Shown here piece by piece: positions 1 through 16,139 of a stretch of DNA of 64,000 bases. Positions within the stretch are counted from its first letter, which is position 1; every line of letters starts with the position of its first letter. The notes below the pieces were generated by a model. That model ran no database searches. It was not told the DNA's origin and worked only from the letters and a program-made list of their open reading frames with translations. The stretch spans positions 1 through 64,000 of IMG/VR virus record IMGVR_UViG_3300025536_000010; one strand, 5' to 3'. The position numbers were made by a program, and so were the translations under genes.

Positions 1-1200
1 TTCCCCCCCGACGCTCTGTTCCACATGAAGGAGCCGACGCTCTCCGGTATCATCTGTCGCGGCTGGGGCTTGCCGCGCATCCTCAGCAACTTCCGCCAGA
101 TCTGGTATGTCCAGGTGCTGCGGCGCTTCAACGAAGCTATCGCCCTCGACTACGTTGTGCCCTTCCGCATTCTTACGCCGGCACCGGCGCAAGGCAGCAC
201 GGGTCGGGGCGGCATGAGCATCGACCCGATGAGCATGTTCGCTGGGCACGACTTCCGCGGCCTGGCTCGCAAGATGATCCGTGACCGCCGCCGCGATCCG
301 GCGTCGATCCAGGTTTTCCCGTTCCCGGTCAACTTCCAGATGTTCGGGGCCGACGCGAACCAGCTAGCCCCGCGTGACCTCATGGATCAGGGTCTGGAAA
401 CGTTGCTCAACGACGCCGGCACGCCCATCGAACTGTACAATGGTAGTCTCCAGTTGCAGACGGCCCCTGTGGCCCTGCGTCTGTTTGAGTCGACCTGGCA
501 TCATCTGGTCCACGACGCTAATTCCTTCCTGGCCTGGCTTGTGCGGCAGGTTTCGCAGATCATGTCCTGGGAGGCCGTGGACGCGGAACTCAAGCGGGTC
601 ACCATCGCGGACAACCTCGAAAAGCAGATGATGGCTGCCCAGCTGATGATGTCGCAGCAGCTGTCTGGCTCGACCGTGCTGGGCGACCTGGGCTTCGTCT
701 GGAAGAAGGAGCAGAAGCAGATTGCCGAAGAGGCACGCTACCAGTCCGAACTCCAGTCGCGTGCGCAGGAGGAGATGGACCAGACGGGGTTCGCCCAGCA
801 GATCGCCAAGGGCCAGGCCGCCTCCGGCGGTGGCGATCCGACTGCCCAGGGAGGCGCTGCTGGAGGTGCCGGCGGCCAGGCTGCCGCAGGCGCACCTCCG
901 GGGCCGATGGGCGCAATGGGCGGTCAGGGGCCGGTGTCGGCTTACCTGGGCTCCATGACGCCCAACGTGCCGCAGACGCCAGAGGACATGATGGCAGTGG
1001 CCGACAGCCTGGCCAACGACCTCCTGGGTCTGCCAGAGTCGGTCAAGGACAGCGAGCTGCGCAAGCTCAAGCAGTACAACGAGGCGCTGCACTCGATGGT
1101 GAAGGCCCGCATGCAGCAAAAACGGAGCGACGCCAAGAGTTCGGCGGGGAACGCTGCTGTCGGCCAGATGCAGCAAGGTGGTGGCGCTCCCCCCATGTAA
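1..1200 (+). CDS. Putative phage portal protein, C-terminal part (5' truncated by window edge)
   Basis: Frame is open from base 1 (FPPDALFH-MKEP...). The helical segment GWGLPRILSNFRQIWYVQVLRRFNEAIALDYVVPFR and the Q/G/P-rich tail resemble large-phage portal proteins; recognition by eye. Confidence 0.5.
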   Translation, partial: FPPDALFHMKEPTLSGIICRGWGLPRILSNFRQIWYVQVLRRFNEAIALDYVVPFRILTPAPAQGSTGRGGMSIDPMSMFAGHDFRGLARKMIRDRRRDPASIQVFPFPVNFQMFGADANQLAPRDLMDQGLETLLNDAGTPIELYNGSLQLQTAPVALRLFESTWHHLVHDANSFLAWLVRQVSQIMSWEAVDAELKRVTIADNLEKQMMAAQLMMSQQLSGSTVLGDLGFVWKKEQKQIAEEARYQSELQSRAQEEMDQTGFAQQIAKGQAASGGGDPTAQGGAAGGAGGQAAAGAPPGPMGAMGGQGPVSAYLGSMTPNVPQTPEDMMAVADSLANDLLGLPESVKDSELRKLKQYNEALHSMVKARMQQKRSDAKSSAGNAAVGQMQQGGGAPPM

Positions 1201-2034: not shown

Positions 2035-3077
2035 TCTGCATACTCTCTCCTTACGGTCGCGGCGAGGTCACTACCGCCGCGATCCGTCTCGCGGACCTCG
2101 TGCTGTCTATCGGCACCGAGGTCCGTTTTGTGGCGTGCGGACGCATGGAAAAGAACGTCCACCCGTTTTGGGACAGCCGCGTGCTGACCGGGCGCGGCGA
2201 GGGCGTCTACAAGGCAGCGCGTGGTTGTGAGCGGGTCATTCACTTCCTTGTGGACCCCGCGCACGTTGAGCGCGTTAAGCTCGTGGCTGAGAAGGCTGAG
2301 CATATTCTGGTGCCCTCATGGCACGACCTGCGGCCGTGCGACGTGCGCCACTTGGCCTCCTACGGTTTGATCGTTGCTCCTACGCAAATGGCTGCCAGGC
2401 TGCTGCAACAGGAGTGCTTCGGCGGTACGCACCCGTCGTTGACCTGGTGTCGCTGGGACGCTGGACTACCGCCGACACGCCGCGACGGCGTGGTCGCGGA
2501 CAAAGTCATCCGGGCTTGTTTCTACTGCGACGCCTCGGCTATCGACTTCTGCGGCCCGTTGGTGCTGCACGTTGCGCACGAACTGCTGTCCCTGCTCGGG
2601 CGCCTGGAGATCACACTGCTGTCGACTAAATCGTGGTCGAAGCAGGACCGGCAGGAGATGAAACGGTTCATGACCCGCTGGCCTGGCCGCCTAAAACATA
2701 AGCGCGTCGGCAACACCATCGAGCAGGCCAAGGATTTCCACGCCCACGACTGGGTTGTTTTCCCTGGTGTGCGTGGCGATTTTGGCATCAACGTGGTGCG
2801 TGCTTTGGCGTGCGGCGCGCCCTGCGTCGTCTATGACGTGGAGCCGTTCAGCGAGCTTATCTCGGATGACAGGAATGGTGTCCTTGTGCCCTGCGAGGTC
2901 AGGGTTACGGCCATGAAGGCCCCGCTGGCTGTGCCGAGCGCGGATAAGCTGATTGCCGGTTGTGCGCGAGCGTTTGCCGATACGCAACTGCTCATTGCCA
3001 TGCAGCAGCGCGACTGGATGATTAAGGAACACCAAGGGGCGTTCAACGAGGCGTGGCTCAGAGCTATCGGTTATTGA
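2031..3077 (+). CDS. Glycosyltransferase, GT-B (GT4-like)
   Basis: C-terminal VVFPGVRGDFGINVVRALACGAPCVVYDVEPFSELISDDRNGVLVP matches the GT4 E-x7-E region; ATGA overlap with previous gene. Confidence 0.75.
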   Translation: MICILSPYGRGEVTTAAIRLADLVLSIGTEVRFVACGRMEKNVHPFWDSRVLTGRGEGVYKAARGCERVIHFLVDPAHVERVKLVAEKAEHILVPSWHDLRPCDVRHLASYGLIVAPTQMAARLLQQECFGGTHPSLTWCRWDAGLPPTRRDGVVADKVIRACFYCDASAIDFCGPLVLHVAHELLSLLGRLEITLLSTKSWSKQDRQEMKRFMTRWPGRLKHKRVGNTIEQAKDFHAHDWVVFPGVRGDFGINVVRALACGAPCVVYDVEPFSELISDDRNGVLVPCEVRVTAMKAPLAVPSADKLIAGCARAFADTQLLIAMQQRDWMIKEHQGAFNEAWLRAIGY

Positions 3078-3095
3078 CTAAAAGCCAGTTTTGAG
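3078..3095 (+). repeat. Dispersed AAAAGCC-nn-TTTT motif copy
   Basis: CTAAAAGCCAGTTTTGAG, intergenic. Confidence 0.7.
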
Positions 3096-3108
3096 AACCT
3101 GGCCGACT

Positions 3109-3117
3109 TGTTATACT
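3109..3117 (+). promoter_or_regulatory. Extended -10 promoter element upstream of the tubulin operon
   Basis: TG-T-TATACT about 30 nt before the RBS/ATG at 3148. Confidence 0.5.
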
Positions 3118-3147
3118 CTGGGAGTCCGAAAGGCGAAAGGAGTCGCT

Positions 3148-3324
3148 ATGAGGAATCCTGCACTGATCGCGTGGCTGGCCAAACAAGCAGCTGTTACGTC
3201 TCGTTCGCGGGTCGTACCGGCCAAGGACGCCGAGAGCGTCGCCAAGGCCCTCAAAGAGGAGCCACCCACAGCTTCGCAGGCGGCGACGCGCTACGGCCGT
3301 AAACCTTATCTACGGGGACCATGA
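3148..3324 (+). CDS. Small hypothetical protein (58 aa)
   Basis: Strong RBS AAAGGAG; MRNPALIAWLAKQAA...; stop 1 nt before tubulin start. Confidence 0.6.
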   Translation: MRNPALIAWLAKQAAVTSRSRVVPAKDAESVAKALKEEPPTASQAATRYGRKPYLRGP

Positions 3325-3325
3325 C

Positions 3326-4603
3326 ATGGCTGATGACAAAGACCTCAACAAGTCGCTCGAAGCTGCCCAGCAGCGCCCTGTTCGCGCTGGTAAGCTGACG
3401 CCGGCCAAGAAGGAGGCCAGTGCCCCAGCGCCAGGTGCCAAGGGGCCTGGCAACATCGCCGCCCGCCTCAACCCTGCGGCCCACCAGCAGGCCACCAAGC
3501 AGGTCGTAGTCAACGACGACTTCGATTACGACACGGCGATGCACATGGCTTTCATCGGCGCCGGCCAGGGTGGCTCGCGCATCGCCAACAGTTTCTGGAA
3601 GCTGGGTTACCGCCGCGTGGGCATCTTCAATACCACCGAAAGCGACTTCGAGGGCCTGGAGGCTGAGATCCCCAAACTCTCGCTCGATATTGGCGGGGCT
3701 GCCAAGGACATGAAGTTTGCTCGGCAGGCCCTCGACGGCCGCACCGAAGAGATCTGGGATCTCATGATTCGGTCCTGGGGTAACAACCCAGACTGTGCTC
3801 TGGTTTGCGTCGGCCTGGGCGGTGGTTCGGGCTCCGGTTGCGCTCTGCCCATCGTGCAGCTGGCCCGCAAGTACATGGAGGCCAAGAATCGGCCGCCGCG
3901 CGTCGGTGCCATCGTCAGCCTGCCCAGCGTGACAGAGGGCCAAATCGTGGCTCGCAACGCCGTCACGGCCTTTGGTGAGTTGCTCCAGGCCAAGGTGAGC
4001 CCGCTGCTCATCATCGACAACAGCCGCGTCCATAGTCTGTATCGGCCGTCCATGAGTCAGCTGTTGCCCAAGAGCAACGAACTGGTCAGCCAGATGCTGC
4101 ACCTGTTCAACCAGCTGGCGGCCATCCATAGTCCGCACATCACCTTCGACCGTAATGAGTTTGCCCAGCTGCTCGATGGTGGTATCTGCGTCATGGGCTG
4201 CGCCGACATCAACAAGCTGGACAGCCCGGCGGACATCTCGGCCGCGATCCGCGACGAACTGGCCCAGAGCATCCTGGCCGAGGTTGATCTGCGCCGTGGG
4301 CGTAAAGCCGCCTGCCTGTTTGTGGGTCATCAGGACATTCTGGACTCGCTCGACCTGGACTATTTTGATGCTGGGTTCACCACGCTCGACCGCATCGTGG
4401 GCTCGGCGTACCAGGACAAGGACAAAGACCCCACGGTCATTCATCGTGGCCTTTACCCGGGTGTGGACGCTGGGTTACAGTGCTATACGATGATTTCGGA
4501 ACTCGACCCGCCTCGGGGTCGCCTCCAGGAGCTTGCCAAGAAAGGCGGGCTCGCCGTGACGCAAGGGGCGTCGGTGGCGAAACACCTGGGCGTCGGGGAC
4601 TGA
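3326..4603 (+). CDS. Tubulin/FtsZ-family GTPase (PhuZ/TubZ-like)
   Basis: FIGAGQGGSRIA, NTTESD, GLGGGSGSG tubulin signature, LPSVTEG, IIDN, T7-like TFDRNEF. Confidence 0.92.
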   Translation: MADDKDLNKSLEAAQQRPVRAGKLTPAKKEASAPAPGAKGPGNIAARLNPAAHQQATKQVVVNDDFDYDTAMHMAFIGAGQGGSRIANSFWKLGYRRVGIFNTTESDFEGLEAEIPKLSLDIGGAAKDMKFARQALDGRTEEIWDLMIRSWGNNPDCALVCVGLGGGSGSGCALPIVQLARKYMEAKNRPPRVGAIVSLPSVTEGQIVARNAVTAFGELLQAKVSPLLIIDNSRVHSLYRPSMSQLLPKSNELVSQMLHLFNQLAAIHSPHITFDRNEFAQLLDGGICVMGCADINKLDSPADISAAIRDELAQSILAEVDLRRGRKAACLFVGHQDILDSLDLDYFDAGFTTLDRIVGSAYQDKDKDPTVIHRGLYPGVDAGLQCYTMISELDPPRGRLQELAKKGGLAVTQGASVAKHLGVGD

Positions 4604-4633
4604 ACTACATACACGGCGGCCCCAGGTGCCATC

Positions 4634-5014
4634 ATGGACCGAGCTTTCAATGTCGATCCCTATGCGTGCGGGTCGTTGCCGCCGCGACCCGGACGCCTGT
4701 GCAACCCGCGCTACGACGCAGGGACAAGGCAGCACACCTTGTCCTTGCCGCCTTGCCCGCCCGGCGTAAAACGCCGGGCCGTGTTTTTCGAGGTGCGCGG
4801 CCAGGGCACCAGCACGGTGCAGGTTCGTCCCGGCCTCGACACCGTGAGCATCGCCTTGCCGCCCAACGCTTCCGTGGTGGCCTTTGTTATGCACTACGGG
4901 CCACACGGCGAGGCTGTCGCCGGTCCCTTGTCAGCCTTCCGGGCGACGACCAAGGCCCCACCAAGGCCCAAGCGCCCCAAGGTCAATCGTACTGAGGAGA
5001 GGACGCCGGCATGA
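4634..5014 (+). CDS. Hypothetical protein
   Basis: ORF coupled by ATGA overlap to next gene; basic C-terminus. Confidence 0.55.
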   Translation: MDRAFNVDPYACGSLPPRPGRLCNPRYDAGTRQHTLSLPPCPPGVKRRAVFFEVRGQGTSTVQVRPGLDTVSIALPPNASVVAFVMHYGPHGEAVAGPLSAFRATTKAPPRPKRPKVNRTEERTPA

Positions 5015-5319
5015 ACCAACCACCCTGCGACATCTGCCCGCACAGCAACAACGTCCAGCCGTGCGACCAGCCTTGCGTGTTCCTCATGGCGGTACTGCAC
5101 CTACCAGGTGGGACGCCCAAGGTCGTCACCTCGCCGCGCTACACGGTGGAGATGTCTCGCCTGGGCGAACTGGTCGACAAGATCCCCGATTTCGGCAACG
5201 ACATCGCCAACGAACTGCGCAACCAGCTGCAACTTCCGCCTGTCGCCAGTACGCTCTACGGCAAGGTGGAAATGGCCGGAGACACCAATGTCGATCAAAC
5301 CAAGCCTGAGCCAAAATAA
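5011..5319 (+). CDS. Hypothetical protein
   Basis: RBS GAGGAG, N-terminal Cys cluster CDIC..CDQPC. Confidence 0.6.
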   Translation: MNQPPCDICPHSNNVQPCDQPCVFLMAVLHLPGGTPKVVTSPRYTVEMSRLGELVDKIPDFGNDIANELRNQLQLPPVASTLYGKVEMAGDTNVDQTKPEPK

Positions 5320-10670: not shown

Positions 10671-11288
10671 ATGATGAACCGTCGTGAAGCCTTGAAAGCC
10701 GGCCTGGCGAGTTTGCTGACGGCGCTGAGTCCGTTCAAGGCCGCTGCCGATCCTGTTGTGGAAGCGTATGTCGCCAATGGTTTCGTGAACGAGGAACGGG
10801 TAGGCGACGATCTGATCGAGACGTACGCTTTCACCCGTGGTGTGCTCTTGGTCGGCGACATGACTCCTGGCTTGCTGGTCGCCGATGGTTCGTTCAGCGT
10901 GACTGTGCGCAAGGTGCAGCCCCGTTGTGATGTCAGCGGCTTGTTCACGCATCTCCTGGGTCCGTATCCCATCATGCAGGCCACGCATGACATCTTTGGC
11001 GACTGGGAGCGCTCGAAGACGAGCTTCTGGCGTCTGGGCCTGCTCAAGACGGACAAGACCTCGGTGTGGTTCAAGATCTCAAAACCACTTTTTACCCAGA
11101 TCGGCGTGAGCGTGGTGGCCCGGGTCAACAAACCGGGACAAACAGACAACCGGGGCGACGAGTTCGTGCCCCAATTCCCTGGCGACGATGGCACGATGAT
11201 GGTGACGGAGTGGGCGAACTTCATGAGTTGCGAAGAACCCAAACTCTGTCCAGCACCCAAGGATTATCAAATCCCGGGAGCACGCTAA
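10671..11288 (+). CDS. Hypothetical exported protein with twin-arginine (Tat)-like signal
   Basis: MMNRREALKAGLASLLTALSPFKAAA; RBS AAAGGAG. Confidence 0.65.
   Translation: MMNRREALKAGLASLLTALSPFKAAADPVVEAYVANGFVNEERVGDDLIETYAFTRGVLLVGDMTPGLLVADGSFSVTVRKVQPRCDVSGLFTHLLGPYPIMQATHDIFGDWERSKTSFWRLGLLKTDKTSVWFKISKPLFTQIGVSVVARVNKPGQTDNRGDEFVPQFPGDDGTMMVTEWANFMSCEEPKLCPAPKDYQIPGAR
11078..11096 (+). repeat. Dispersed motif, weaker copy inside CDS
   Basis: CTCAAAACCACTTTTTACC. Confidence 0.4.
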
Positions 11289-11342
11289 CGTCGCAGCCGG
11301 TGCAAGAGCGCCCGCTAACTCAAGAAAGTCACGGAGGACGCT

Positions 11343-14300
11343 ATGAACCCAGCAGCCGCTCCAGGCCCCGTTATCAACAACATCAACGGCGGTATGGCCC
11401 AGCAGGGTCGGTTCTCGGGCATGTTCGGCATGCACCCGGGTTTCAACTTCATGGCGGCGACGCAGCACGCCCAGCGGAACCCAAATGCAGCGGCTCACCC
11501 GACGATTCCGCAGCAGGGTATGGCCACAGCGGGTGGAGTGCAGCAGGCCCTGCAAAAGGCGAGTTTCGCGGCGCGGGGAGATTACCTGGACGACGTGCTT
11601 TTCGAGCTTTGGGAGGGGCAGAAGCGGGCGGAAGCACAGACAGCGGGGTCGATGGCGGCCGGAGCGAGCGCAACTGCGCCTGCGGGTGGCCAAAATGGTG
11701 GGCAGCAGCCGAACAGGTCGACGCGGGGCATGATGGGTGGCGGTTATCGCGGTGCGCGCGGTGGTGGCGGGCAAAACCACGGAGTCGTGGGACAAACCAG
11801 CGGGCCGCAACCGCTCGTGGGGAACGTGAACCCACTCGGGCAAATGGGCAATCCGATGGCTACCGCCGCCCGACAAGGCATGGCGAGCCTCGCCCCCCGC
11901 CCCTTTGGGGGGACAATGGCCCCACAGCCGCTAAAAATGGCGATGATGGTGCCCGGTCCTGGCGGCATGGCTCCGAACCCAGGCGCCACGGCCCCCATGC
12001 CGCCGCCTCCGGGGCCTCCGGGCATGGCTGCGCCTGGTGGCGGTGGGCCGCTGCCGCCGCCTCCTCCGAATGGCGGCGCACCGATCCCCGGACAGCCTCC
12101 GGTCGACCCCATGACAGGCCAACCGATGGACCCTGCTGCGATGGGCGGCGGTGCGCCTCCGGGGCCTATCGACCCCATGACGGGACAACCTGTGCAGGCT
12201 CCAATGGCCTCGCCGCCGGCTCCGCCGTTGCCTGCTAACCCGCGGCCTGCGCAAGCCTCGCCCAAGGACAGCCAACAGGCCCAGCGGGAGGCAAACATGC
12301 TGCGCATGCTGGAGCAAAAACAGCAGTCGGAGGCATCTGCGACCCCGCAGGACGCCAACGATGACATCCAGGCGCAGAGCATGGCTTTGGCCAAGACGGC
12401 TGAGTCGCCTGGTATGCGGATGATGCGTGAGAACCACAACCGCATCACGCTGGGCGTGCTGGGCGAAGACCTCCGCCGCAAGTACGGTATGGGGCCGTTC
12501 TCCAAGCGTGCCTCCGAGAGTGATTCGTTCTCCGACATGAACGAGGACGATACGTTGGGCAGCCCCAAGGCCATGAGCAAAGGCTGGCAGTGGCGCTACA
12601 TGAACAAGGACGTCGACGAGGGCCTCAGTCAGTGGTTGCCCAGGCTGTTCAAGAGCCAGCACACGCCTGTCAGTGAACTGCTGGCCTCGCCGGGCAAGCA
12701 GGGGCTGCTCGGCGGCCTGGGCGGGCTCGCGTTGGGTGGCGCCGGCGGTGCGCTGGGCGCCCAACATCTCGGTGCAAACCCGGTGCTCGGTGGTTTAGGT
12801 GGCGCCGGGCTTGGGGCGATCCTGGGCGGCCTCAGCGGCTATGGCTCGCGCCGCAAGAAGAATGACAAGCTGATCGACGCCATGCGTTTCATGCCGCCGG
12901 GAGCCACACTGGGCGAGATGGACCAGCTGGAGGCAGCCAAGAAAGCACCCAAGCCAGACCCCATCGCCGGCTCGGCGGTCCAAAAACTGGCTTTTGAGAA
13001 ATTCGCCCAGGCGCTCAAGCAGAGCATGGAGGTCGAGCAGGCTGTCCCGCTCGGTCTGGCGGGCGTGGGCGCTGGTGTTGGTATGTTCGCTGGCGGTGCC
13101 CAGGGACGCGACCTGGCCCAACGGAACATGCAGGCCCAACTGCCCGGTCAGATCGAGGCCGCACGGCTCCAGCACCGCAACTCGATGAACCAGGGCCTCG
13201 ACAAGATGTACGGCCGTGGCCTCGACAACTGGGCGAAGCGGCGGGCGGGTATCCTCCAGGAACGCATGGCCATCGGCCCGGACGGCAATTTCAAGGTGCC
13301 GCGTCCGGCGGGGAATGAGGGCTGGGAGCGGATGCGCGATCAGCATGGGCAACTCGCGGCTTCGGGGCCACAGCTGCGCCAGGGTTTCAATCCGCAGCAG
13401 GCCGCAGCCGCCAAGCAGAAGTTCCTGGCTTCGGGGCAGGCTCAGCAGTTCATCCAGCAGCAACGTGGGGCCTGGCAGAACCAGCTGGGACGCATGCAGA
13501 GTCAGGCACCTGGACAGGTTGCCGCGGCCGGGCGTCGGGGCATGCTGCGCGGTGGTTTGGCGGGCGGTTTGGGCGGCCTGGCTGTGGCGAGCGCCCCCAT
13601 GCTCATGGGCATGTTCGGTGGTAAGCAGGCCGAGGATGGCAGCATCTATCTGGAGAAGCAGGCCAAGGAGGTCACCTACACGGACCCCAAAACGGGCAAG
13701 CAGGTGACGACGGACCATGAGGCCCTTGGTAAGAAATGCGCGGAGATGCTCTACAAGACCGTCGACGACGGGGACACGCAGCTTATCCACGCCGCCATGC
13801 TCGATCACCTGCTGCGTCTCAATAAGCGCTCGGCTGATGCCGAGCGTGACACAAACTGCCCGCTCTGCGGCATGCTGCACGAGTTCGGGCTGGCGTGCAG
13901 CACCAAAAAGGCCGAGCAAGAGGATACCAGTCTCAAGTCGCCCAACCGCAGCGCCTCGGGCGAGAGCAAGGGCCTGACCTTCGCGCACCGTGCGGACGAT
14001 CACGCCACGGGTCCAGCGGCCTGGCAGAGCATCGACCGTTTCCTCTCGAAAGACGTCACCGTGAAGACGGACCCCTACAAGGGCAAGCACGGCGGCACCA
14101 AGAAGGACACGGTCAACTACAAGCTCGCCGCCCTCAGTGGTGTCGAGTCGGGCTTGCTGGGCCTCAAGGGGCGCCTGATGCAGCCAGGCGGTTGGCTGGA
14201 TGAACTCATGGATGCCCAACGCAGCCCCGTTCAAGCGGGCGGTTCGACCTTTGGTACGCTGCCCAAACTCAAGCCACCCGATCTCAAGGGTTTGCTGGGC

Positions 14301-16139
14301 AAGCTCACGGGTGCTGCTCCCGCTGCGCCCACGGACGCGCCTGCGGATGCGCACCTGGCGCCGTTGCCGGTCGCGCTAGCCGGTGCGGGTATTGGTTTGG
14401 GCGGTGCCGGTCTGGGCTATGGCCTGGGCAAGCTGATGGGTAAGAAAAAGGAGGAACCCGAGAAGAGTGGGGCGGACGCTTTGCGGGAACTATCGCTGAG
14501 CCCGGCAGCCGTGGGCTTCTTCGACTACTGCGACCGTTTGGGCCTCGACGCGACCCAGGTCAAACAGGCTGTCGACGTGGCGTGTGCCAAGTTCCCCGAA
14601 GCGGAAGGAGAACTGCGTCATGGCCTCGCCAAGCGAGCCCAGGCGCAGGTGCCCTTTTGCCTGGAGAAACAGGCGAACAAGTTGCGTGGGATGCTGAACG
14701 CCGGCAAGAGCGCCTGGGGCTGGATGCGCGGGGCCAAGCCCGTCATGGCGCAGGGCCTCCAGACCGCTCCGGTGACCAGGGCGACAGCTTCACCATTGGT
14801 GCAGCAGGCGGCGCAACTGCGGCAGGCGACGCCTGGCCTGGGCGTACAGCAGGCGATGGCGCAGGCGCGCTCGCAGCAGCCTGGCATGCAGGGCGTCTTC
14901 AATAACTACATGCGCGGTGCCACGCCCTACTCGGTGGCTTCGTCGGTCGGCCAAACGGCGATGGGTGGCCTCGGCGGTGCTTTCGCTGGCGAAGAACTGG
15001 GCCTACCTGGCGGTGGTTGGACTGGGGCCGCAGCTGGTGCGTTGGCCATGAACCCGATGGCCCGGCGCTTCATGGCCAGGAACCCCAGGAGCCTGGCTCA
15101 GCCCTTCATGCGGGGCGGGCAAGGAGCCATCGGCGGCGGTTTCGCCGGCAGCGCGATCGACCAGACAGCGGGTGCTCTGGGTTACGACACCAACGGGCGT
15201 TTCGCTCAGGCCGGTGCCGGGTTCGGTTTGCTTGCTGGCGGCGGACGCGGCCTCGCAGCCATGCGTGTCGCTCGCCACGGTGCGTTCTTGCCGGGCGTGA
15301 TGGCGCAGGCGTCCAAGATGTCGGGACCAGCGCGTGCGGACTTCTTGGCCAAGAACATGAGCATGGCGGGCCAGGTCAACTCGCTGGGCGCCAAGGCTAC
15401 GCAGGGCCTGGAGCAGTTCGCGCGTGGTTCAATGGCTCCCCTCACGGGCGTCGGCAAGACGGGCTGGAACCTGATGACGGGGGCCAAGAACCCGTTCAGC
15501 AGTGCCTGGAAGGGTGCGGTTCCGGGCACTCGTCTGGGACGCATTGGCGCTACCGTGGGCGGCGTTGGCATGGGCGCCACGGCGCTGGGCATGGGCTCGG
15601 AGTACCTCCATAACCGATTCAGCAACGCGGTCGATGAAAAGCTGGGCGACGTCTACAACCAGGCCATGCCGCAATTCCAGGATGATGCGGCGGGCTTCCT
15701 CGACCAGTACATGCAGAGTCGGGGTCTGATGAACGAGCAGGGCCAGTTCGATCCCATGCAGACGGTCAACCGCAACGGCGGCATCATGGGCAGCATGATG
15801 CAGGGCAGCGACAAGATCTTCCAGGGCCTGGGCATGGACCCGAGTCGCATGAGCCCCATGCAGAAGATGATGATTATGGGCGGCGCACTCGGCCTGGGCG
15901 GCGGGGCAATGGGCGGTTCGCCGGGCGTGGCAGGCGCAGGCGGCCTTGCCATGATGGGCGGGCTTCTGCCTACACTGATGCAGGGTCAGGGGCAGGGCGG
16001 ACAACGCTATTCGGGCTACAACCCGATGCAGCAGCAGTCGGCCCCTGGTTACGAAGGCCAGGCGCCTGGACAGAACCCGAACTCCCCACAGGCCCGCAAC
16101 GAATGGCTGCACCAGCAACAACTCCAGCAGGGAGGTTAA
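11343..16139 (+). CDS. Giant (1598 aa) Gly/Pro/Met/Gln-rich putative virion/ejection polyprotein
   Basis: RBS GGAGG; Pro-rich region with DPMTGQP x2; repeated glycine-zipper segments; K-x-A motifs between blocks. Confidence 0.65.
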   Translation: MNPAAAPGPVINNINGGMAQQGRFSGMFGMHPGFNFMAATQHAQRNPNAAAHPTIPQQGMATAGGVQQALQKASFAARGDYLDDVLFELWEGQKRAEAQTAGSMAAGASATAPAGGQNGGQQPNRSTRGMMGGGYRGARGGGGQNHGVVGQTSGPQPLVGNVNPLGQMGNPMATAARQGMASLAPRPFGGTMAPQPLKMAMMVPGPGGMAPNPGATAPMPPPPGPPGMAAPGGGGPLPPPPPNGGAPIPGQPPVDPMTGQPMDPAAMGGGAPPGPIDPMTGQPVQAPMASPPAPPLPANPRPAQASPKDSQQAQREANMLRMLEQKQQSEASATPQDANDDIQAQSMALAKTAESPGMRMMRENHNRITLGVLGEDLRRKYGMGPFSKRASESDSFSDMNEDDTLGSPKAMSKGWQWRYMNKDVDEGLSQWLPRLFKSQHTPVSELLASPGKQGLLGGLGGLALGGAGGALGAQHLGANPVLGGLGGAGLGAILGGLSGYGSRRKKNDKLIDAMRFMPPGATLGEMDQLEAAKKAPKPDPIAGSAVQKLAFEKFAQALKQSMEVEQAVPLGLAGVGAGVGMFAGGAQGRDLAQRNMQAQLPGQIEAARLQHRNSMNQGLDKMYGRGLDNWAKRRAGILQERMAIGPDGNFKVPRPAGNEGWERMRDQHGQLAASGPQLRQGFNPQQAAAAKQKFLASGQAQQFIQQQRGAWQNQLGRMQSQAPGQVAAAGRRGMLRGGLAGGLGGLAVASAPMLMGMFGGKQAEDGSIYLEKQAKEVTYTDPKTGKQVTTDHEALGKKCAEMLYKTVDDGDTQLIHAAMLDHLLRLNKRSADAERDTNCPLCGMLHEFGLACSTKKAEQEDTSLKSPNRSASGESKGLTFAHRADDHATGPAAWQSIDRFLSKDVTVKTDPYKGKHGGTKKDTVNYKLAALSGVESGLLGLKGRLMQPGGWLDELMDAQRSPVQAGGSTFGTLPKLKPPDLKGLLGKLTGAAPAAPTDAPADAHLAPLPVALAGAGIGLGGAGLGYGLGKLMGKKKEEPEKSGADALRELSLSPAAVGFFDYCDRLGLDATQVKQAVDVACAKFPEAEGELRHGLAKRAQAQVPFCLEKQANKLRGMLNAGKSAWGWMRGAKPVMAQGLQTAPVTRATASPLVQQAAQLRQATPGLGVQQAMAQARSQQPGMQGVFNNYMRGATPYSVASSVGQTAMGGLGGAFAGEELGLPGGGWTGAAAGALAMNPMARRFMARNPRSLAQPFMRGGQGAIGGGFAGSAIDQTAGALGYDTNGRFAQAGAGFGLLAGGGRGLAAMRVARHGAFLPGVMAQASKMSGPARADFLAKNMSMAGQVNSLGAKATQGLEQFARGSMAPLTGVGKTGWNLMTGAKNPFSSAWKGAVPGTRLGRIGATVGGVGMGATALGMGSEYLHNRFSNAVDEKLGDVYNQAMPQFQDDAAGFLDQYMQSRGLMNEQGQFDPMQTVNRNGGIMGSMMQGSDKIFQGLGMDPSRMSPMQKMMIMGGALGLGGGAMGGSPGVAGAGGLAMMGGLLPTLMQGQGQGGQRYSGYNPMQQQSAPGYEGQAPGQNPNSPQARNEWLHQQQLQQGG
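12980..12998 (-). repeat. Dispersed motif copy inside CDS (reverse orientation)
   Basis: Reverse complement CTCAAAAGCCAGTTTTTGG. Confidence 0.6.

What the first reader, a model, noticed from the sequence alone, without database searches (positions are those of the whole stretch)
3148..4603. Tubulin/FtsZ-family GTPase with its own promoter and a tiny upstream partner
Seen: intact GGGSGSG signature, a D-x-x-E T7-like loop, an approximately 65-aa disordered N-terminal extension, a 58-aa ORF coupled in front, and a motif copy just upstream of the promoter. Established: PhuZ spindles position the phage nucleus in phiKZ-like phages, and TubZ partitions plasmid and c-st phage DNA. Inference: a phage cytoskeleton whose subfamily cannot be settled by eye; the small ORF may be an adaptor or polymerisation regulator.
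Basis: partly seen in the sequence, partly recalled or inferred. Interest (0 to 1): 0.62.

Follow-up and report, generated by a model that had tools for sequence, protein, structure and literature searches.

The report
New phage tubulin with tiny partner
A 235-kb uncultured giant phage carries an intact tubulin-like GTPase from a previously undescribed lineage, neither PhuZ nor classical TubZ, made together with a conserved 58-residue basic protein, which points to a third kind of phage cytoskeleton in phages with no detectable phage-nucleus shell gene.

Summary
ORF 3326-4603 encodes a 425-aa tubulin/FtsZ-superfamily GTPase with intact nucleotide-binding loops (GGGSGSG, FDRNEF T7 loop), a disordered 65-aa N-terminus and a conserved C-terminal tail. 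A 58-aa ORF (3148-3324) ends one base before its start codon.

The window is the start of a 234,886-bp IMG/VR phage record. It has multisubunit RNA polymerase genes, no integrase and no detectable chimallin.

The tubulin has more than 288 metagenomic relatives (55-70% identity). They nearly always sit in a portal–GT2–GT1–tubulin block. In an ML tree they form their own clade (100/99 support), separate from PhuZ and from c-st and pBtoxis TubZ. The closest solved structures are TubZ (Z 37), then CetZ and FtsZ. PhuZ ranks below all of these.

The small ORF founds a new family of about 64 clusters (pI ~10.8, invariant RYGRK-type C-terminal motif). It lay directly upstream of the tubulin in every locus that has it, but many relatives lack it.

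Best reading: a cytomotive filament that organises phage DNA or assembly during lytic infection, with the small protein as adaptor or regulator. Binding and polymerisation are untested. It is a new variant of a known kind, of moderate interest.

The parts
3078..3098 (+). Partly palindromic motif CTAAAAGCCAGTTTTGAGAAC, a genome-wide gene-start-associated element; here it lies 50 nt before the small ORF and directly follows the GT1 stop codon
   Evidence: a similar sequence sits at the same place in relatives L042, L044 and L045
3109..3117 (+). Extended -10-like TGTTATACT; weak candidate host-type promoter element, unverified
   Evidence: read; not reported by the sigma-70 scan
3137..3142 (+). 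AAGGAG ribosome-binding site of the small ORF
3148..3324 (+). 58-aa basic protein (pI 10.7) with two short helices and otherwise extended; conserved blocks are an N-terminal 'IAWLAKQAA' helix, 'TSRSR' and a C-terminal 'TRYGRKPY'; member of a new family of ~64 clusters
   Evidence: no Pfam or PHROG match
3314..3328 (+). Coupling junction: GGGGA box, small-ORF stop TGA (3322-3324), one base, then the tubulin ATG (3326-3328)
   Evidence: tight junctions also in L091 (4-nt overlap), L092 (abutting, no gap) and L090 (43-nt gap)
3326..4603 (+). Tubulin/FtsZ-superfamily GTPase, 425 aa, from a new phage clade
3326..3520 (+). Disordered basic N-terminal extension (aa 1-65, pI 9.6) carrying the conserved short motif G-N-[VI]-A-A-x-L-x-P-x-A-H (aa 42-53)
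3818..3838 (+). T4 tubulin signature GGGSGSG (aa 165-171)
   Evidence: 87 of 120 homologs have GGGTGSG, 28 have GGGSGSG
4148..4159 (+). T7-loop acidic pair D275-R-N-E278, aligned to the F-D-x-x-E-F of RepX/TubZ
4544..4600 (+). Flexible C-terminal tail (aa 407-425) ending in the conserved peptide A-x-[FH]-L-[GR]-V-x-D
4759..4788 (+). Terminator-like hairpin (9-bp stem, 8 G-C pairs) plus T-run, 155 nt after the tubulin stop; it lies inside a weakly conserved 126-aa ORF (4634-5014), so its role is uncertain

Best explanation
The locus is a two-gene operon of a virulent-looking jumbo phage: a 58-aa basic, mostly disordered protein and a tubulin/FtsZ-superfamily GTPase.

Shown: the tubulin has every nucleotide-binding and catalytic loop intact and folds like TubZ. 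It belongs to its own large, phage-restricted clade within the TubZ/PhuZ supergroup. It is a near-core gene, fixed next to the portal gene and two glycosyltransferase genes. The small protein is conserved and translationally coupled to it.

Inferred: like its relatives, the protein polymerises with GTP into dynamic (treadmilling) filaments, with the T7 loop of one subunit completing the GTPase site of the next. During lytic infection these filaments would position or move phage material, such as replicating DNA, capsids or an assembly zone. The conserved N-terminal motif and C-terminal tail peptide are the likely handles for filament contacts or partners. The basic small protein would act as an adaptor (to DNA or another cargo) or as a regulator of assembly.
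For: Tubulin identity:
- Pfam matches above cut-off.
- AF2 model with pLDDT 87.6.
- Foldseek E 4e-24 to TubZ.
- VIA-align Z 37.4 (B. cereus TubZ, PDB 4ei7), 35.1 (Bt TubZ), 34.8 (CetZ2), 32.4 (c-st TubZ) and ~30 (FtsZ); PhuZ absent from the top 50.
- T1, T4, T5 and T7 residues are invariant in 42 homologs.

Separate clade:
- ML tree (IQ-TREE, LG+C20): the family is monophyletic at 100/99 and PhuZ at 100/100. All TubZ/PhuZ-like rows separate from FtsZ at 100/100.
- The only PHROG hit is the c-st TubZ family at E 0.002.
- The PhuZ PHROG does not hit the genome.

Phage context:
- 234.9-kb virus record.
- Multisubunit RNAP genes, terminase and tail fibres.
- No integrase.

Near-core gene:
- portal-GT2-GT1-tubulin synteny in all 37 close-family loci.
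- 15 of 16 loci found through the portal gene alone also have it.

Small partner:
- About 64 clusters.
- Directly upstream of the tubulin in all 17 loci in which it was found.
- Overlapping or abutting stop and start codons.
Against: - No polymerisation, expression or localisation data exist. The only sequencing run holding the DNA is the probable source metagenome.
- The small ORF is absent from many relatives, including the whole marine subclade, so it cannot be an obligatory part of the machine.
- One relative, L113, lacks the tubulin near its portal gene, so the gene is dispensable in at least one lineage.
- No cargo is identified.
- The tree lacks RepX (the pXO1-type TubZ), CetZ, BtubA/B and eukaryotic or Asgard tubulins, and is rooted on one FtsZ.
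Confidence: 0.55

Rival explanations
1. TubZRC-like partition system. The phage persists as a low-copy episome (pseudolysogeny or plasmid-prophage, as in Clostridium phage c-st). The tubulin filament segregates the episome, with the small basic protein acting as the centromere-binding adaptor in place of TubR.
For: - The nearest solved structures and sequence profiles are plasmid and phage TubZ.
- The gene order, a small upstream ORF followed by the tubulin, mirrors tubR-tubZ in c-st and pBtoxis.
- The small protein is very basic (pI 10.7), which fits nucleic-acid binding.
Against: - No iterated centromere-like repeats lie near the operon.
- The small protein is 58 aa with two short helices and no winged-helix fold.
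- It is absent from many relatives.
- No integrase was found.
- The single ParB_N-domain gene lies 212 kb away.
- The gene is fixed in a portal/glycosyltransferase block of a 235-kb phage.
- The clade is not nested within TubZ.
Confidence: 0.2
2. PhuZ-like spindle for a phage nucleus whose shell protein is too divergent to detect. The filaments would centre and rotate a compartment, as in phiKZ-like phages.
For: - The phage encodes multisubunit RNAP subunits. In jumbo phages, tubulin and msRNAP are reported to co-occur (PMC7824862).
- The C-terminal tail ends in a short hydrophobic peptide after a flexible linker, as PhuZ tails do.
Against: - Pfam Chimallin (PF25677) and the PHROG nuclear-shell family (phrog_4795) find nothing at E<=10 in this genome.
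- phrog_4795 finds nothing at E<=1 in four 93-100% complete relatives, while it recovers phiKZ gp54 at 2e-232.
- Seven unannotated 524-975-aa ORFs tested have no chimallin Pfam hit.
- The tubulin is not PhuZ by tree, profile or fold rank.
- The nearest cultured phages (Salmonella phage Arash, Vibrio phages D69, D148 and D181) are not phiKZ-like.
Confidence: 0.1
3. Host-division interference. The phage tubulin co-assembles with or competes against host FtsZ, or uses its FtsZ-like C-terminal peptide to capture FtsZ partners such as FtsA. That would block division or anchor filaments to the membrane.
For: The family tail consensus G-L-A-Q-F-L-G-V-N-D-COOH loosely resembles the E. coli FtsZ tail D-I-P-A-F-L-R-K-Q-A-D-COOH. 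This is a lead only.
Against: - The resemblance is three or four residues, and the window's own tail reads A-K-H-L-G-V-G-D.
- The core is only 18-20% identical to FtsZ.
- It separates from FtsZ with full support in the tree.
- The host is unknown, so its FtsZ partners cannot be examined.
Confidence: 0.1

Closest known systems
TubZ (type III plasmid/prophage partition tubulin: pBtoxis TubZ, the B. cereus TubZ of PDB 4ei7 whose sequence is titled RepX, phage c-st TubZ)
   Same: - It is the best structural and sequence match: Z 37.4 over 333 residues at 2.9 A to the B. cereus TubZ (4ei7), and profile E 1e-17 to its RepX-titled sequence.
- It shares the F-D-x-x-E-F T7 loop with RepX.
- Both have a flexible C-terminal tail.
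- Both have a small gene directly upstream.
- Both are carried on a mobile element.
   Different: - Sequence identity is only 19-23%.
- The clade is separate in the tree.
- The upstream protein is not a TubR winged-helix protein.
- There are no tubC-like iterons.
- The gene is embedded in the portal/glycosyltransferase block of a 235-kb phage without lysogeny genes.
PhuZ (tubulin of phiKZ-like nucleus-forming phages, Chimalliviridae)
   Same: - Both are jumbo-phage-encoded tubulins.
- Both phages have multisubunit RNAP genes.
- Both proteins have a C-terminal tail ending in a short hydrophobic peptide.
- Both belong to the same TubZ/PhuZ supergroup relative to FtsZ.
   Different: - The PhuZ PHROG profile does not detect it.
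- BFVD PhuZ matches reach only TM 0.48, E 5e-10.
- PhuZ is not among the top 50 PDB entries.
- It is about 100 residues longer, with an N-terminal extension that PhuZ lacks.
- No chimallin is detectable in the genome.
CetZ / FtsZ (cellular tubulin homologs)
   Same: They share the same two-domain fold and GTP-binding loops; Z is 30-35 and profile E is 7e-11 to 1e-9.
   Different: - The signature is tubulin-type GGG[ST]GSG rather than GGGTGTG.
- There are no division-cluster neighbours.
- The family is phage-restricted: the only close genome hit is a 13-kb contig binned in a Nannocystaceae MAG.
- It separates from E. coli FtsZ and archaeal homologs at 100/100.
TubR (and TubY) adaptors of TubZ systems, compared with the 58-aa ORF
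   Same: It is a small gene immediately upstream of the tubulin and co-expressed with it; it is basic.
   Different: - TubR is an 81-104-aa winged-helix regulator.
- The 58-aa protein has no Pfam or PHROG match.
- It is predicted to be two short helices plus disordered, motif-rich segments.
- No TubY-like MerR gene follows the tubulin.

Membership tests
Tubulin/FtsZ superfamily | GTP-binding loops: T1 G-x-G-x-x-G, T4 signature GGG[TS]G[ST]G, and T5/T6 residues | tested here: met
   GAGQGG (aa 78-83), GGGSGSG (165-171), S198/P200/G205 and N211 are invariant in 42 homologs; Pfam PF00091 scores 43 bits against a cut-off of 33
Tubulin/FtsZ superfamily | T7 loop with acidic catalytic residues after the core helix H7 | tested here: met
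   D275 and E278 are invariant; the loop follows helix 243-266 in the model and aligns to the RepX T7 loop
Tubulin/FtsZ superfamily | Two-domain fold (Rossmann-type GTPase domain plus C-terminal activation domain) | tested here: met
   AF2 pLDDT 87.6; Z 28-37 to TubZ, CetZ and FtsZ over 290-334 residues
Tubulin/FtsZ superfamily | GTP-dependent polymerisation | not testable with these tools
   needs purified protein
TubZ (TubZRC partition) | Groups with known TubZ in a phylogeny | tested here: not met
   The family is a separate clade (100/99). c-st and pBtoxis TubZ fall on the other side of the basal split, with PhuZ. RepX itself was not in the tree.
TubZ (TubZRC partition) | Upstream TubR, a winged-helix centromere-binding adaptor | tested here: not met
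   The upstream protein is 58 aa with helices 4-16 and 28-36 only, and no family match
TubZ (TubZRC partition) | Centromere of iterated repeats (tubC/tubS) next to the operon | tested here: not met
   Only chance-level two-copy repeats in 2700-5300
PhuZ | Sequence membership in the PhuZ family | tested here: not met
   phrog_4733 gives no hit on the protein at E<=0.1 or on the genome at E<=10. tblastn with the window tubulin finds no match in 50,697 GenBank phage records, whereas phiKZ PhuZ as query matches 194 of them.
PhuZ | Occurs in chimallin-encoding (nucleus-forming) phages | tested here: not met
   PF25677 and phrog_4795 are negative in G000, and phrog_4795 is negative in four near-complete relatives, with a positive phiKZ control. 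A shell too divergent for these profiles is not excluded.
FtsZ (host cell division) | Division-cluster synteny and grouping with FtsZ | tested here: not met
   The neighbours are portal, GT2, GT1, DUF6445 and endonuclease VII genes. The protein separates from E. coli FtsZ at 100/100.

The most novel reading that the evidence does not exclude
This would be a third, environmentally widespread lineage of phage tubulin, distinct from PhuZ and TubZ. It would work in jumbo phages that have their own multisubunit RNA polymerase but build no chimallin nucleus. It would use a dedicated intrinsically disordered basic mini-protein (N-terminal helix plus an invariant S-P-H-R-Y-G-R-K-type motif) as a new class of filament adaptor linking phage DNA or another cargo to the filament.
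Probability: 0.3. Interest if true: 0.7.

Novelty: new variant of a known kind. Interest (0 to 1): 0.55.

Why it matters
Phage tubulins are known in two settings: PhuZ spindles around the chimallin nucleus, and TubZ partition of plasmids and plasmid-prophages. This clade fits neither. It is large (more than 288 clusters at 90% identity, from subsurface, freshwater and marine (Tara) data) and it is almost always kept next to the portal gene. It also occurs in genomes where no nucleus shell gene can be found. If its members polymerise, cytoskeleton-based organisation of infection would not be confined to nucleus-forming phages. The family would also give a second, independent system for asking what a phage gains from a tubulin. 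The 58-aa partner family is unannotated and is small enough to test by peptide binding.

Tried and rejected
- Complex prediction of the tubulin (alignment A1) with the small ORF (A2) gave no verdict (score 0.12, mark 0.32). It counts neither for nor against binding.
- tblastn of the tubulin against GenBank phages found no match, even at E<=10 with the core alone. Megablast of the first 20 kb also found nothing.
- In plasmids there was only one weak hit, in Alicyclobacillus.
- A word search with the single 58-aa sequence found only itself. The 8-sequence alignment was needed to find relatives.
- An early idea was that the small ORF's C-terminal 'RYGRKPY' is a frameshifted copy of the 'RRFGE.GWR.F' N-terminal peptide seen on relatives' tubulins, which would imply a programmed +1 frameshift at CCA-TGA-C. 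I rejected it because L045 and L003 carry both elements separately.
- The sigma-70 promoter scan found nothing in front of the operon.
- A search for centromere-like repeats found nothing convincing.
- The sequencing-run search returned only one DNA run, the probable source (a subsurface metagenome), and no RNA.
- An accession guessed for a B. cereus plasmid that might carry RepX is not in the plasmid collection, so RepX is missing from the tree.
- The exhaustive 1.84-billion-protein search was not run, following the operators' cost note. The word search and family scans had already placed the protein.
Full report
**What is there.**
- The + strand of window 3148-4603 holds two tightly packed ORFs.
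- The first runs 3148-3324 and encodes 58 aa. It has an AAGGAG box 5 nt before its ATG.
- Its TGA stop (3322-3324) lies one base before the ATG (3326) of a 425-aa ORF, which has a GGGGA box 7 nt upstream.
- The large protein matches Pfam Tubulin (PF00091, 7.7e-11, 43 bits against a cut-off of 33) and Tubulin_2 (PF13809, 4.4e-9).
- It carries GAGQGG (T1), GGGSGSG (T4, aa 165-171) and SLPSVTEGQ (T5).
- It also carries an F-D275-R-N-E278-F T7 loop, which aligns with the F-D-x-x-E-F of RepX, the pXO1-type TubZ.
- All of these positions are invariant or nearly so in an alignment of 42 homologs.
- An AlphaFold2 model built on that alignment has mean pLDDT 87.6. Residues 1-60 have block pLDDT 38-65, the folded core spans about 66-406, and the tail 407-425 is low-confidence with a short helix at 416-420.
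- The 'own promoter' is not established. The sigma-70 scan reports nothing upstream of 3148. By eye there is only an extended -10-like TGTTATACT (3109-3117).

**Where it lies.**
- The window is the first 64 kb of a 234,886-bp IMG/VR virus record that CheckV rates complete. Its GC content is 62%.
- The record's ends overlap imperfectly by about 131 nt, and the portal gene is split across them.
- The neighbours are the portal C-terminal part, a family-2 and a family-1 glycosyltransferase, then the operon. After it come a DUF6445 / 'minor coat' protein and an endonuclease VII.
- Elsewhere the genome encodes multisubunit RNA-polymerase beta/beta'-like proteins (66967-70113, 72027-73787, 76486-80658). 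It also has collagen-like tail fibres, a baseplate wedge protein and a large terminase.
- The nearest cultured phages are Salmonella phage Arash and Vibrio phages D69, D148 and D181, at only 27-31% identity for terminase and RNAP beta.
- There is no tyrosine integrase. One ParB_N-domain gene lies far away, at 215.7 kb. The tubulin gene is the only one in the genome.

**How widespread the tubulin is.**
- The word-index search returned more than 288 clusters at 55-70% identity, on contigs up to 236 kb, from JGI, ENA, Logan and Tara data. Where they are named at all, they carry only the automatic label 'cell division GTPase FtsZ'.
- In all 37 close-family loci fetched, the order portal-GT2-GT1-tubulin is kept.
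- As an unbiased check, I searched with the portal protein instead. Of 16 loci with enough downstream sequence, 15 had the tubulin in the same place. One locus, L113, had none within 4.4 kb.
- The gene is therefore near-core for this phage clade, but it can be lost.
- Among one genome for each of 185,579 bacterial and archaeal species, the only close hit is a 13-kb contig binned into a Nannocystaceae MAG (59% identity). That is most simply phage DNA in the bin, and at best a weak hint of the host.
- The only public run holding the window's DNA is a subsurface metagenome, probably its source.

**Which subfamily.**
- By sequence against PDB chains, the family profile scores RepX at 1.2e-17, CetZ at 7e-11, FtsZ at about 1e-9, c-st TubZ at 9e-7 and B. 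thuringiensis TubZ at 2e-5. PhuZ is not among the 60 best.
- The only PHROG hit (E 0.002) is phrog_17961, which is the c-st TubZ family. The PhuZ family phrog_4733 hits neither the protein nor the genome.
- By structure, Foldseek ranks TubZ first (4ei7 at 3.8e-24, 2xka at 6e-23), then CetZ, then FtsZ.
- VIA-align gives Z 37.4 (the B. cereus TubZ of PDB 4ei7, whose sequence record is titled RepX; 333 residues, 2.9 A), 35.1 (Bt TubZ), 34.8 (CetZ2), 32.4 (c-st TubZ) and about 30 for FtsZ. No PhuZ entry is among the 50 best.
- In the viral structure library, PhuZ models reach only TM 0.45-0.53.
- I built a maximum-likelihood tree (IQ-TREE, LG+C20+F+G4, 42 rows, 405 columns). Its rows are listed below.
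  - 13 family members
  - 9 more distant viral homologs
  - 11 homologs from genome contigs (12 were found; the Bacillus MAG row L076 was left out)
  - 6 PhuZ sequences
  - c-st TubZ and pBtoxis TubZ
  - E. coli FtsZ as the outgroup
- The family is one clade (ultrafast bootstrap 100, SH-aLRT 99) and PhuZ is another (100/100).
- All TubZ/PhuZ-like rows separate from FtsZ and the archaeal homologs (100/100).
- The family's nearest neighbours are one viral contig and one gammaproteobacterial contig (93/92).
- PhuZ, both TubZ sequences, a Bacillaceae plasmid TubZ-like group and a second viral clade sit on the other side of the basal split (81/88).
- Limits of the tree: RepX, CetZ, BtubA/B and eukaryotic or Asgard tubulins are missing, several branches are long, and the root rests on a single FtsZ.
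- Conclusion: this is a distinct lineage of the TubZ/PhuZ supergroup, closer to TubZ than to PhuZ but a member of neither.

**Chimallin.**
- Pfam PF25677 (built on phiKZ-type chimallin) and the PHROG nuclear-shell family phrog_4795 give no hit at E<=10 in the genome.
- phrog_4795 also finds nothing at E<=1 in four relatives rated 93-100% complete, while it recovers phiKZ gp54 at 1.8e-232.
- The phiKZ-type nucleus-plus-spindle model is therefore not supported. A shell protein too divergent for these profiles cannot be excluded.

**The small ORF.**
- Homologs lie directly upstream of the tubulin in L003, L026-L029, L031 and L045/46.
- An 8-sequence profile then found 64 clusters of 57-87 aa.
- In three independent long contigs, L090-L092, the small gene again abuts the tubulin, with a 43-nt gap, a 4-nt overlap and no gap (directly abutting) respectively.
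- Portal-anchored loci added five more cases.
- The conserved blocks are an N-terminal helix (K-I-A-x-L-G-K-x-A-A), S-x-S-R-T-F-K-V, a lysine-rich stretch, and a nearly invariant Q-S-P-H-R-Y-G-R-K. The window copy reads A-A-T-R-Y-G-R-K-P-Y at that position.
- The family is very basic: median pI is 10.8 and the window copy is 10.7. The tubulin core, by contrast, is acidic at pI 5.7.
- The family has no Pfam or PHROG match.
- AlphaFold2 predicts only two short helices, 4-16 and 28-36 (pTM 0.30).
- It is therefore a real, conserved, co-translated gene and the founder of an unannotated family.
- It is missing from many relatives, however. The closest relatives L042 and L044 lack it, and a marine subclade has a ~195-aa 'AGTPGAW' ORF in its place.
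- Whether it binds the tubulin is unknown.

**Mechanism.**
- Shown: an intact tubulin-type GTPase with a TubZ-like fold, conserved short motifs in both disordered ends, and translational coupling to a basic mini-protein.
- Inferred from the established behaviour of TubZ, PhuZ and FtsZ: GTP-driven head-to-tail polymerisation, in which the T7 loop (D275/E278) activates hydrolysis in the neighbouring subunit and gives dynamic filaments.
- I judge the most likely role (0.55) to be organisation of phage DNA or assembly sites during lytic infection, because the phage shows no lysogeny or partition module near the gene and the gene travels with the portal block.
- The TubZRC-like partition reading (0.2) is favoured by the fold ranking and the gene order. 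It is weakened by the lack of a centromere, the lack of a TubR-like fold and the patchy presence of the small gene.
- A nucleus spindle with an undetected shell (0.1) and interference with host FtsZ through the F-L-G-V tail (0.1) remain possible.

**Novelty and literature.**
- Full-text searches found reviews and surveys of PhuZ- and chimallin-encoding phages, and of tubulin in jumbo phages (PMC10299810, PMC12625630, PMC7824862).
- I found no description of this clade or of the small protein. That is absence from the searched library, not proof of absence.
- I rate the finding a new variant of a known kind.

Noticed in passing
window 3078-3098; also 24746, 39967, 52051 and about 20 further sites in the 234.9-kb genome: The partly palindromic motif CTAAAAGCC-N-TTTTGAG(A/G)A occurs 20 times on the + strand and 8 times on the - strand, against 0.1 expected. 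It usually lies 6-36 nt before a start codon and often overlaps the previous gene's TAA. It is conserved before the tubulin operon in relatives. It may be a phage-specific promoter or operator for the phage's own RNA polymerase.
   Followed up: partly
relatives L002, L004, L007/8, L012/13, L022, L024, L026, L027, L031, L042, L044, L045 (upstream of the window-equivalent start): 44 of 120 family tubulins carry an extra in-frame N-terminal peptide, M-x-(K/R)-R-R-F-G-E-x-G-W-R-x-F, about 20-30 residues before the 'M-A/S-D' start used in the window. The window protein lacks it. Its function is unknown.
   Followed up: partly
window 4544-4600 (tubulin aa 407-425): The C-terminal tail peptide A-x-[FH]-L-[GR]-V-x-D-COOH is conserved in 120 homologs. 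It loosely resembles the FtsZ C-terminal peptide (P-A-F-L-R-K-Q-A-D) and, in layout, the hydrophobic end of PhuZ tails.
   Followed up: partly
L010, L011, L013, L015, L017, L020-L024 (between GT1 and the tubulin): A subclade, largely marine, has a conserved ~195-aa ORF (N-terminal 'LVAGTPGAW') between GT1 and the tubulin instead of the 58-aa gene.
   Followed up: no
L113 (IMG/VR contig of 87.9 kb), 10700-15119: This relative has portal, GT2 and GT1 genes but no tubulin within 4.4 kb downstream. The tubulin seems to have been lost or moved in this lineage.
   Followed up: partly
G000 66967-70113, 72027-73787, 76486-80658: Large multisubunit RNA-polymerase beta/beta'-like genes. Their best cultured matches are Salmonella phage Arash and Vibrio phages D69, D148 and D181 (about 30% identity). 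Only one apparent set was seen, not the two split sets of phiKZ-like phages.
   Followed up: partly
L034-L041 (viral contigs of 16-428 kb) and L072-L074 (MAG contigs): There are further uncharacterised tubulin-like lineages. One is a second viral clade (25-28% identity) whose charged N-terminal extensions carry a repeated K-L-x-A-L-K motif. The other is a set of 718-887-aa open reading frames with an N-terminal tubulin-like part, on Thermohalobaculum, Myxococcales and unclassified bacterial MAG contigs.
   Followed up: no
window 1-1200 and the genome end (234756-234886): The record's ends overlap imperfectly by about 131 nt and split the portal gene. This fits a circularly permuted or circular assembly, although IMG/VR classes it as 'linear'.
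   Followed up: partly
window 4759-4788: A strong terminator-like hairpin (GCCCGGCG-TAA-AACGCCGGGC plus a T-run) lies inside the weakly conserved 126-aa ORF 4634-5014, so either the ORF or the terminator call is doubtful.
   Followed up: no
G000 95977-99897 and 142513-145809: Two very large tail-fibre proteins (1306 and 1098 aa) match many collagen-like tail-fibre PHROGs, the 1306-aa one at several separate stretches.
   Followed up: no
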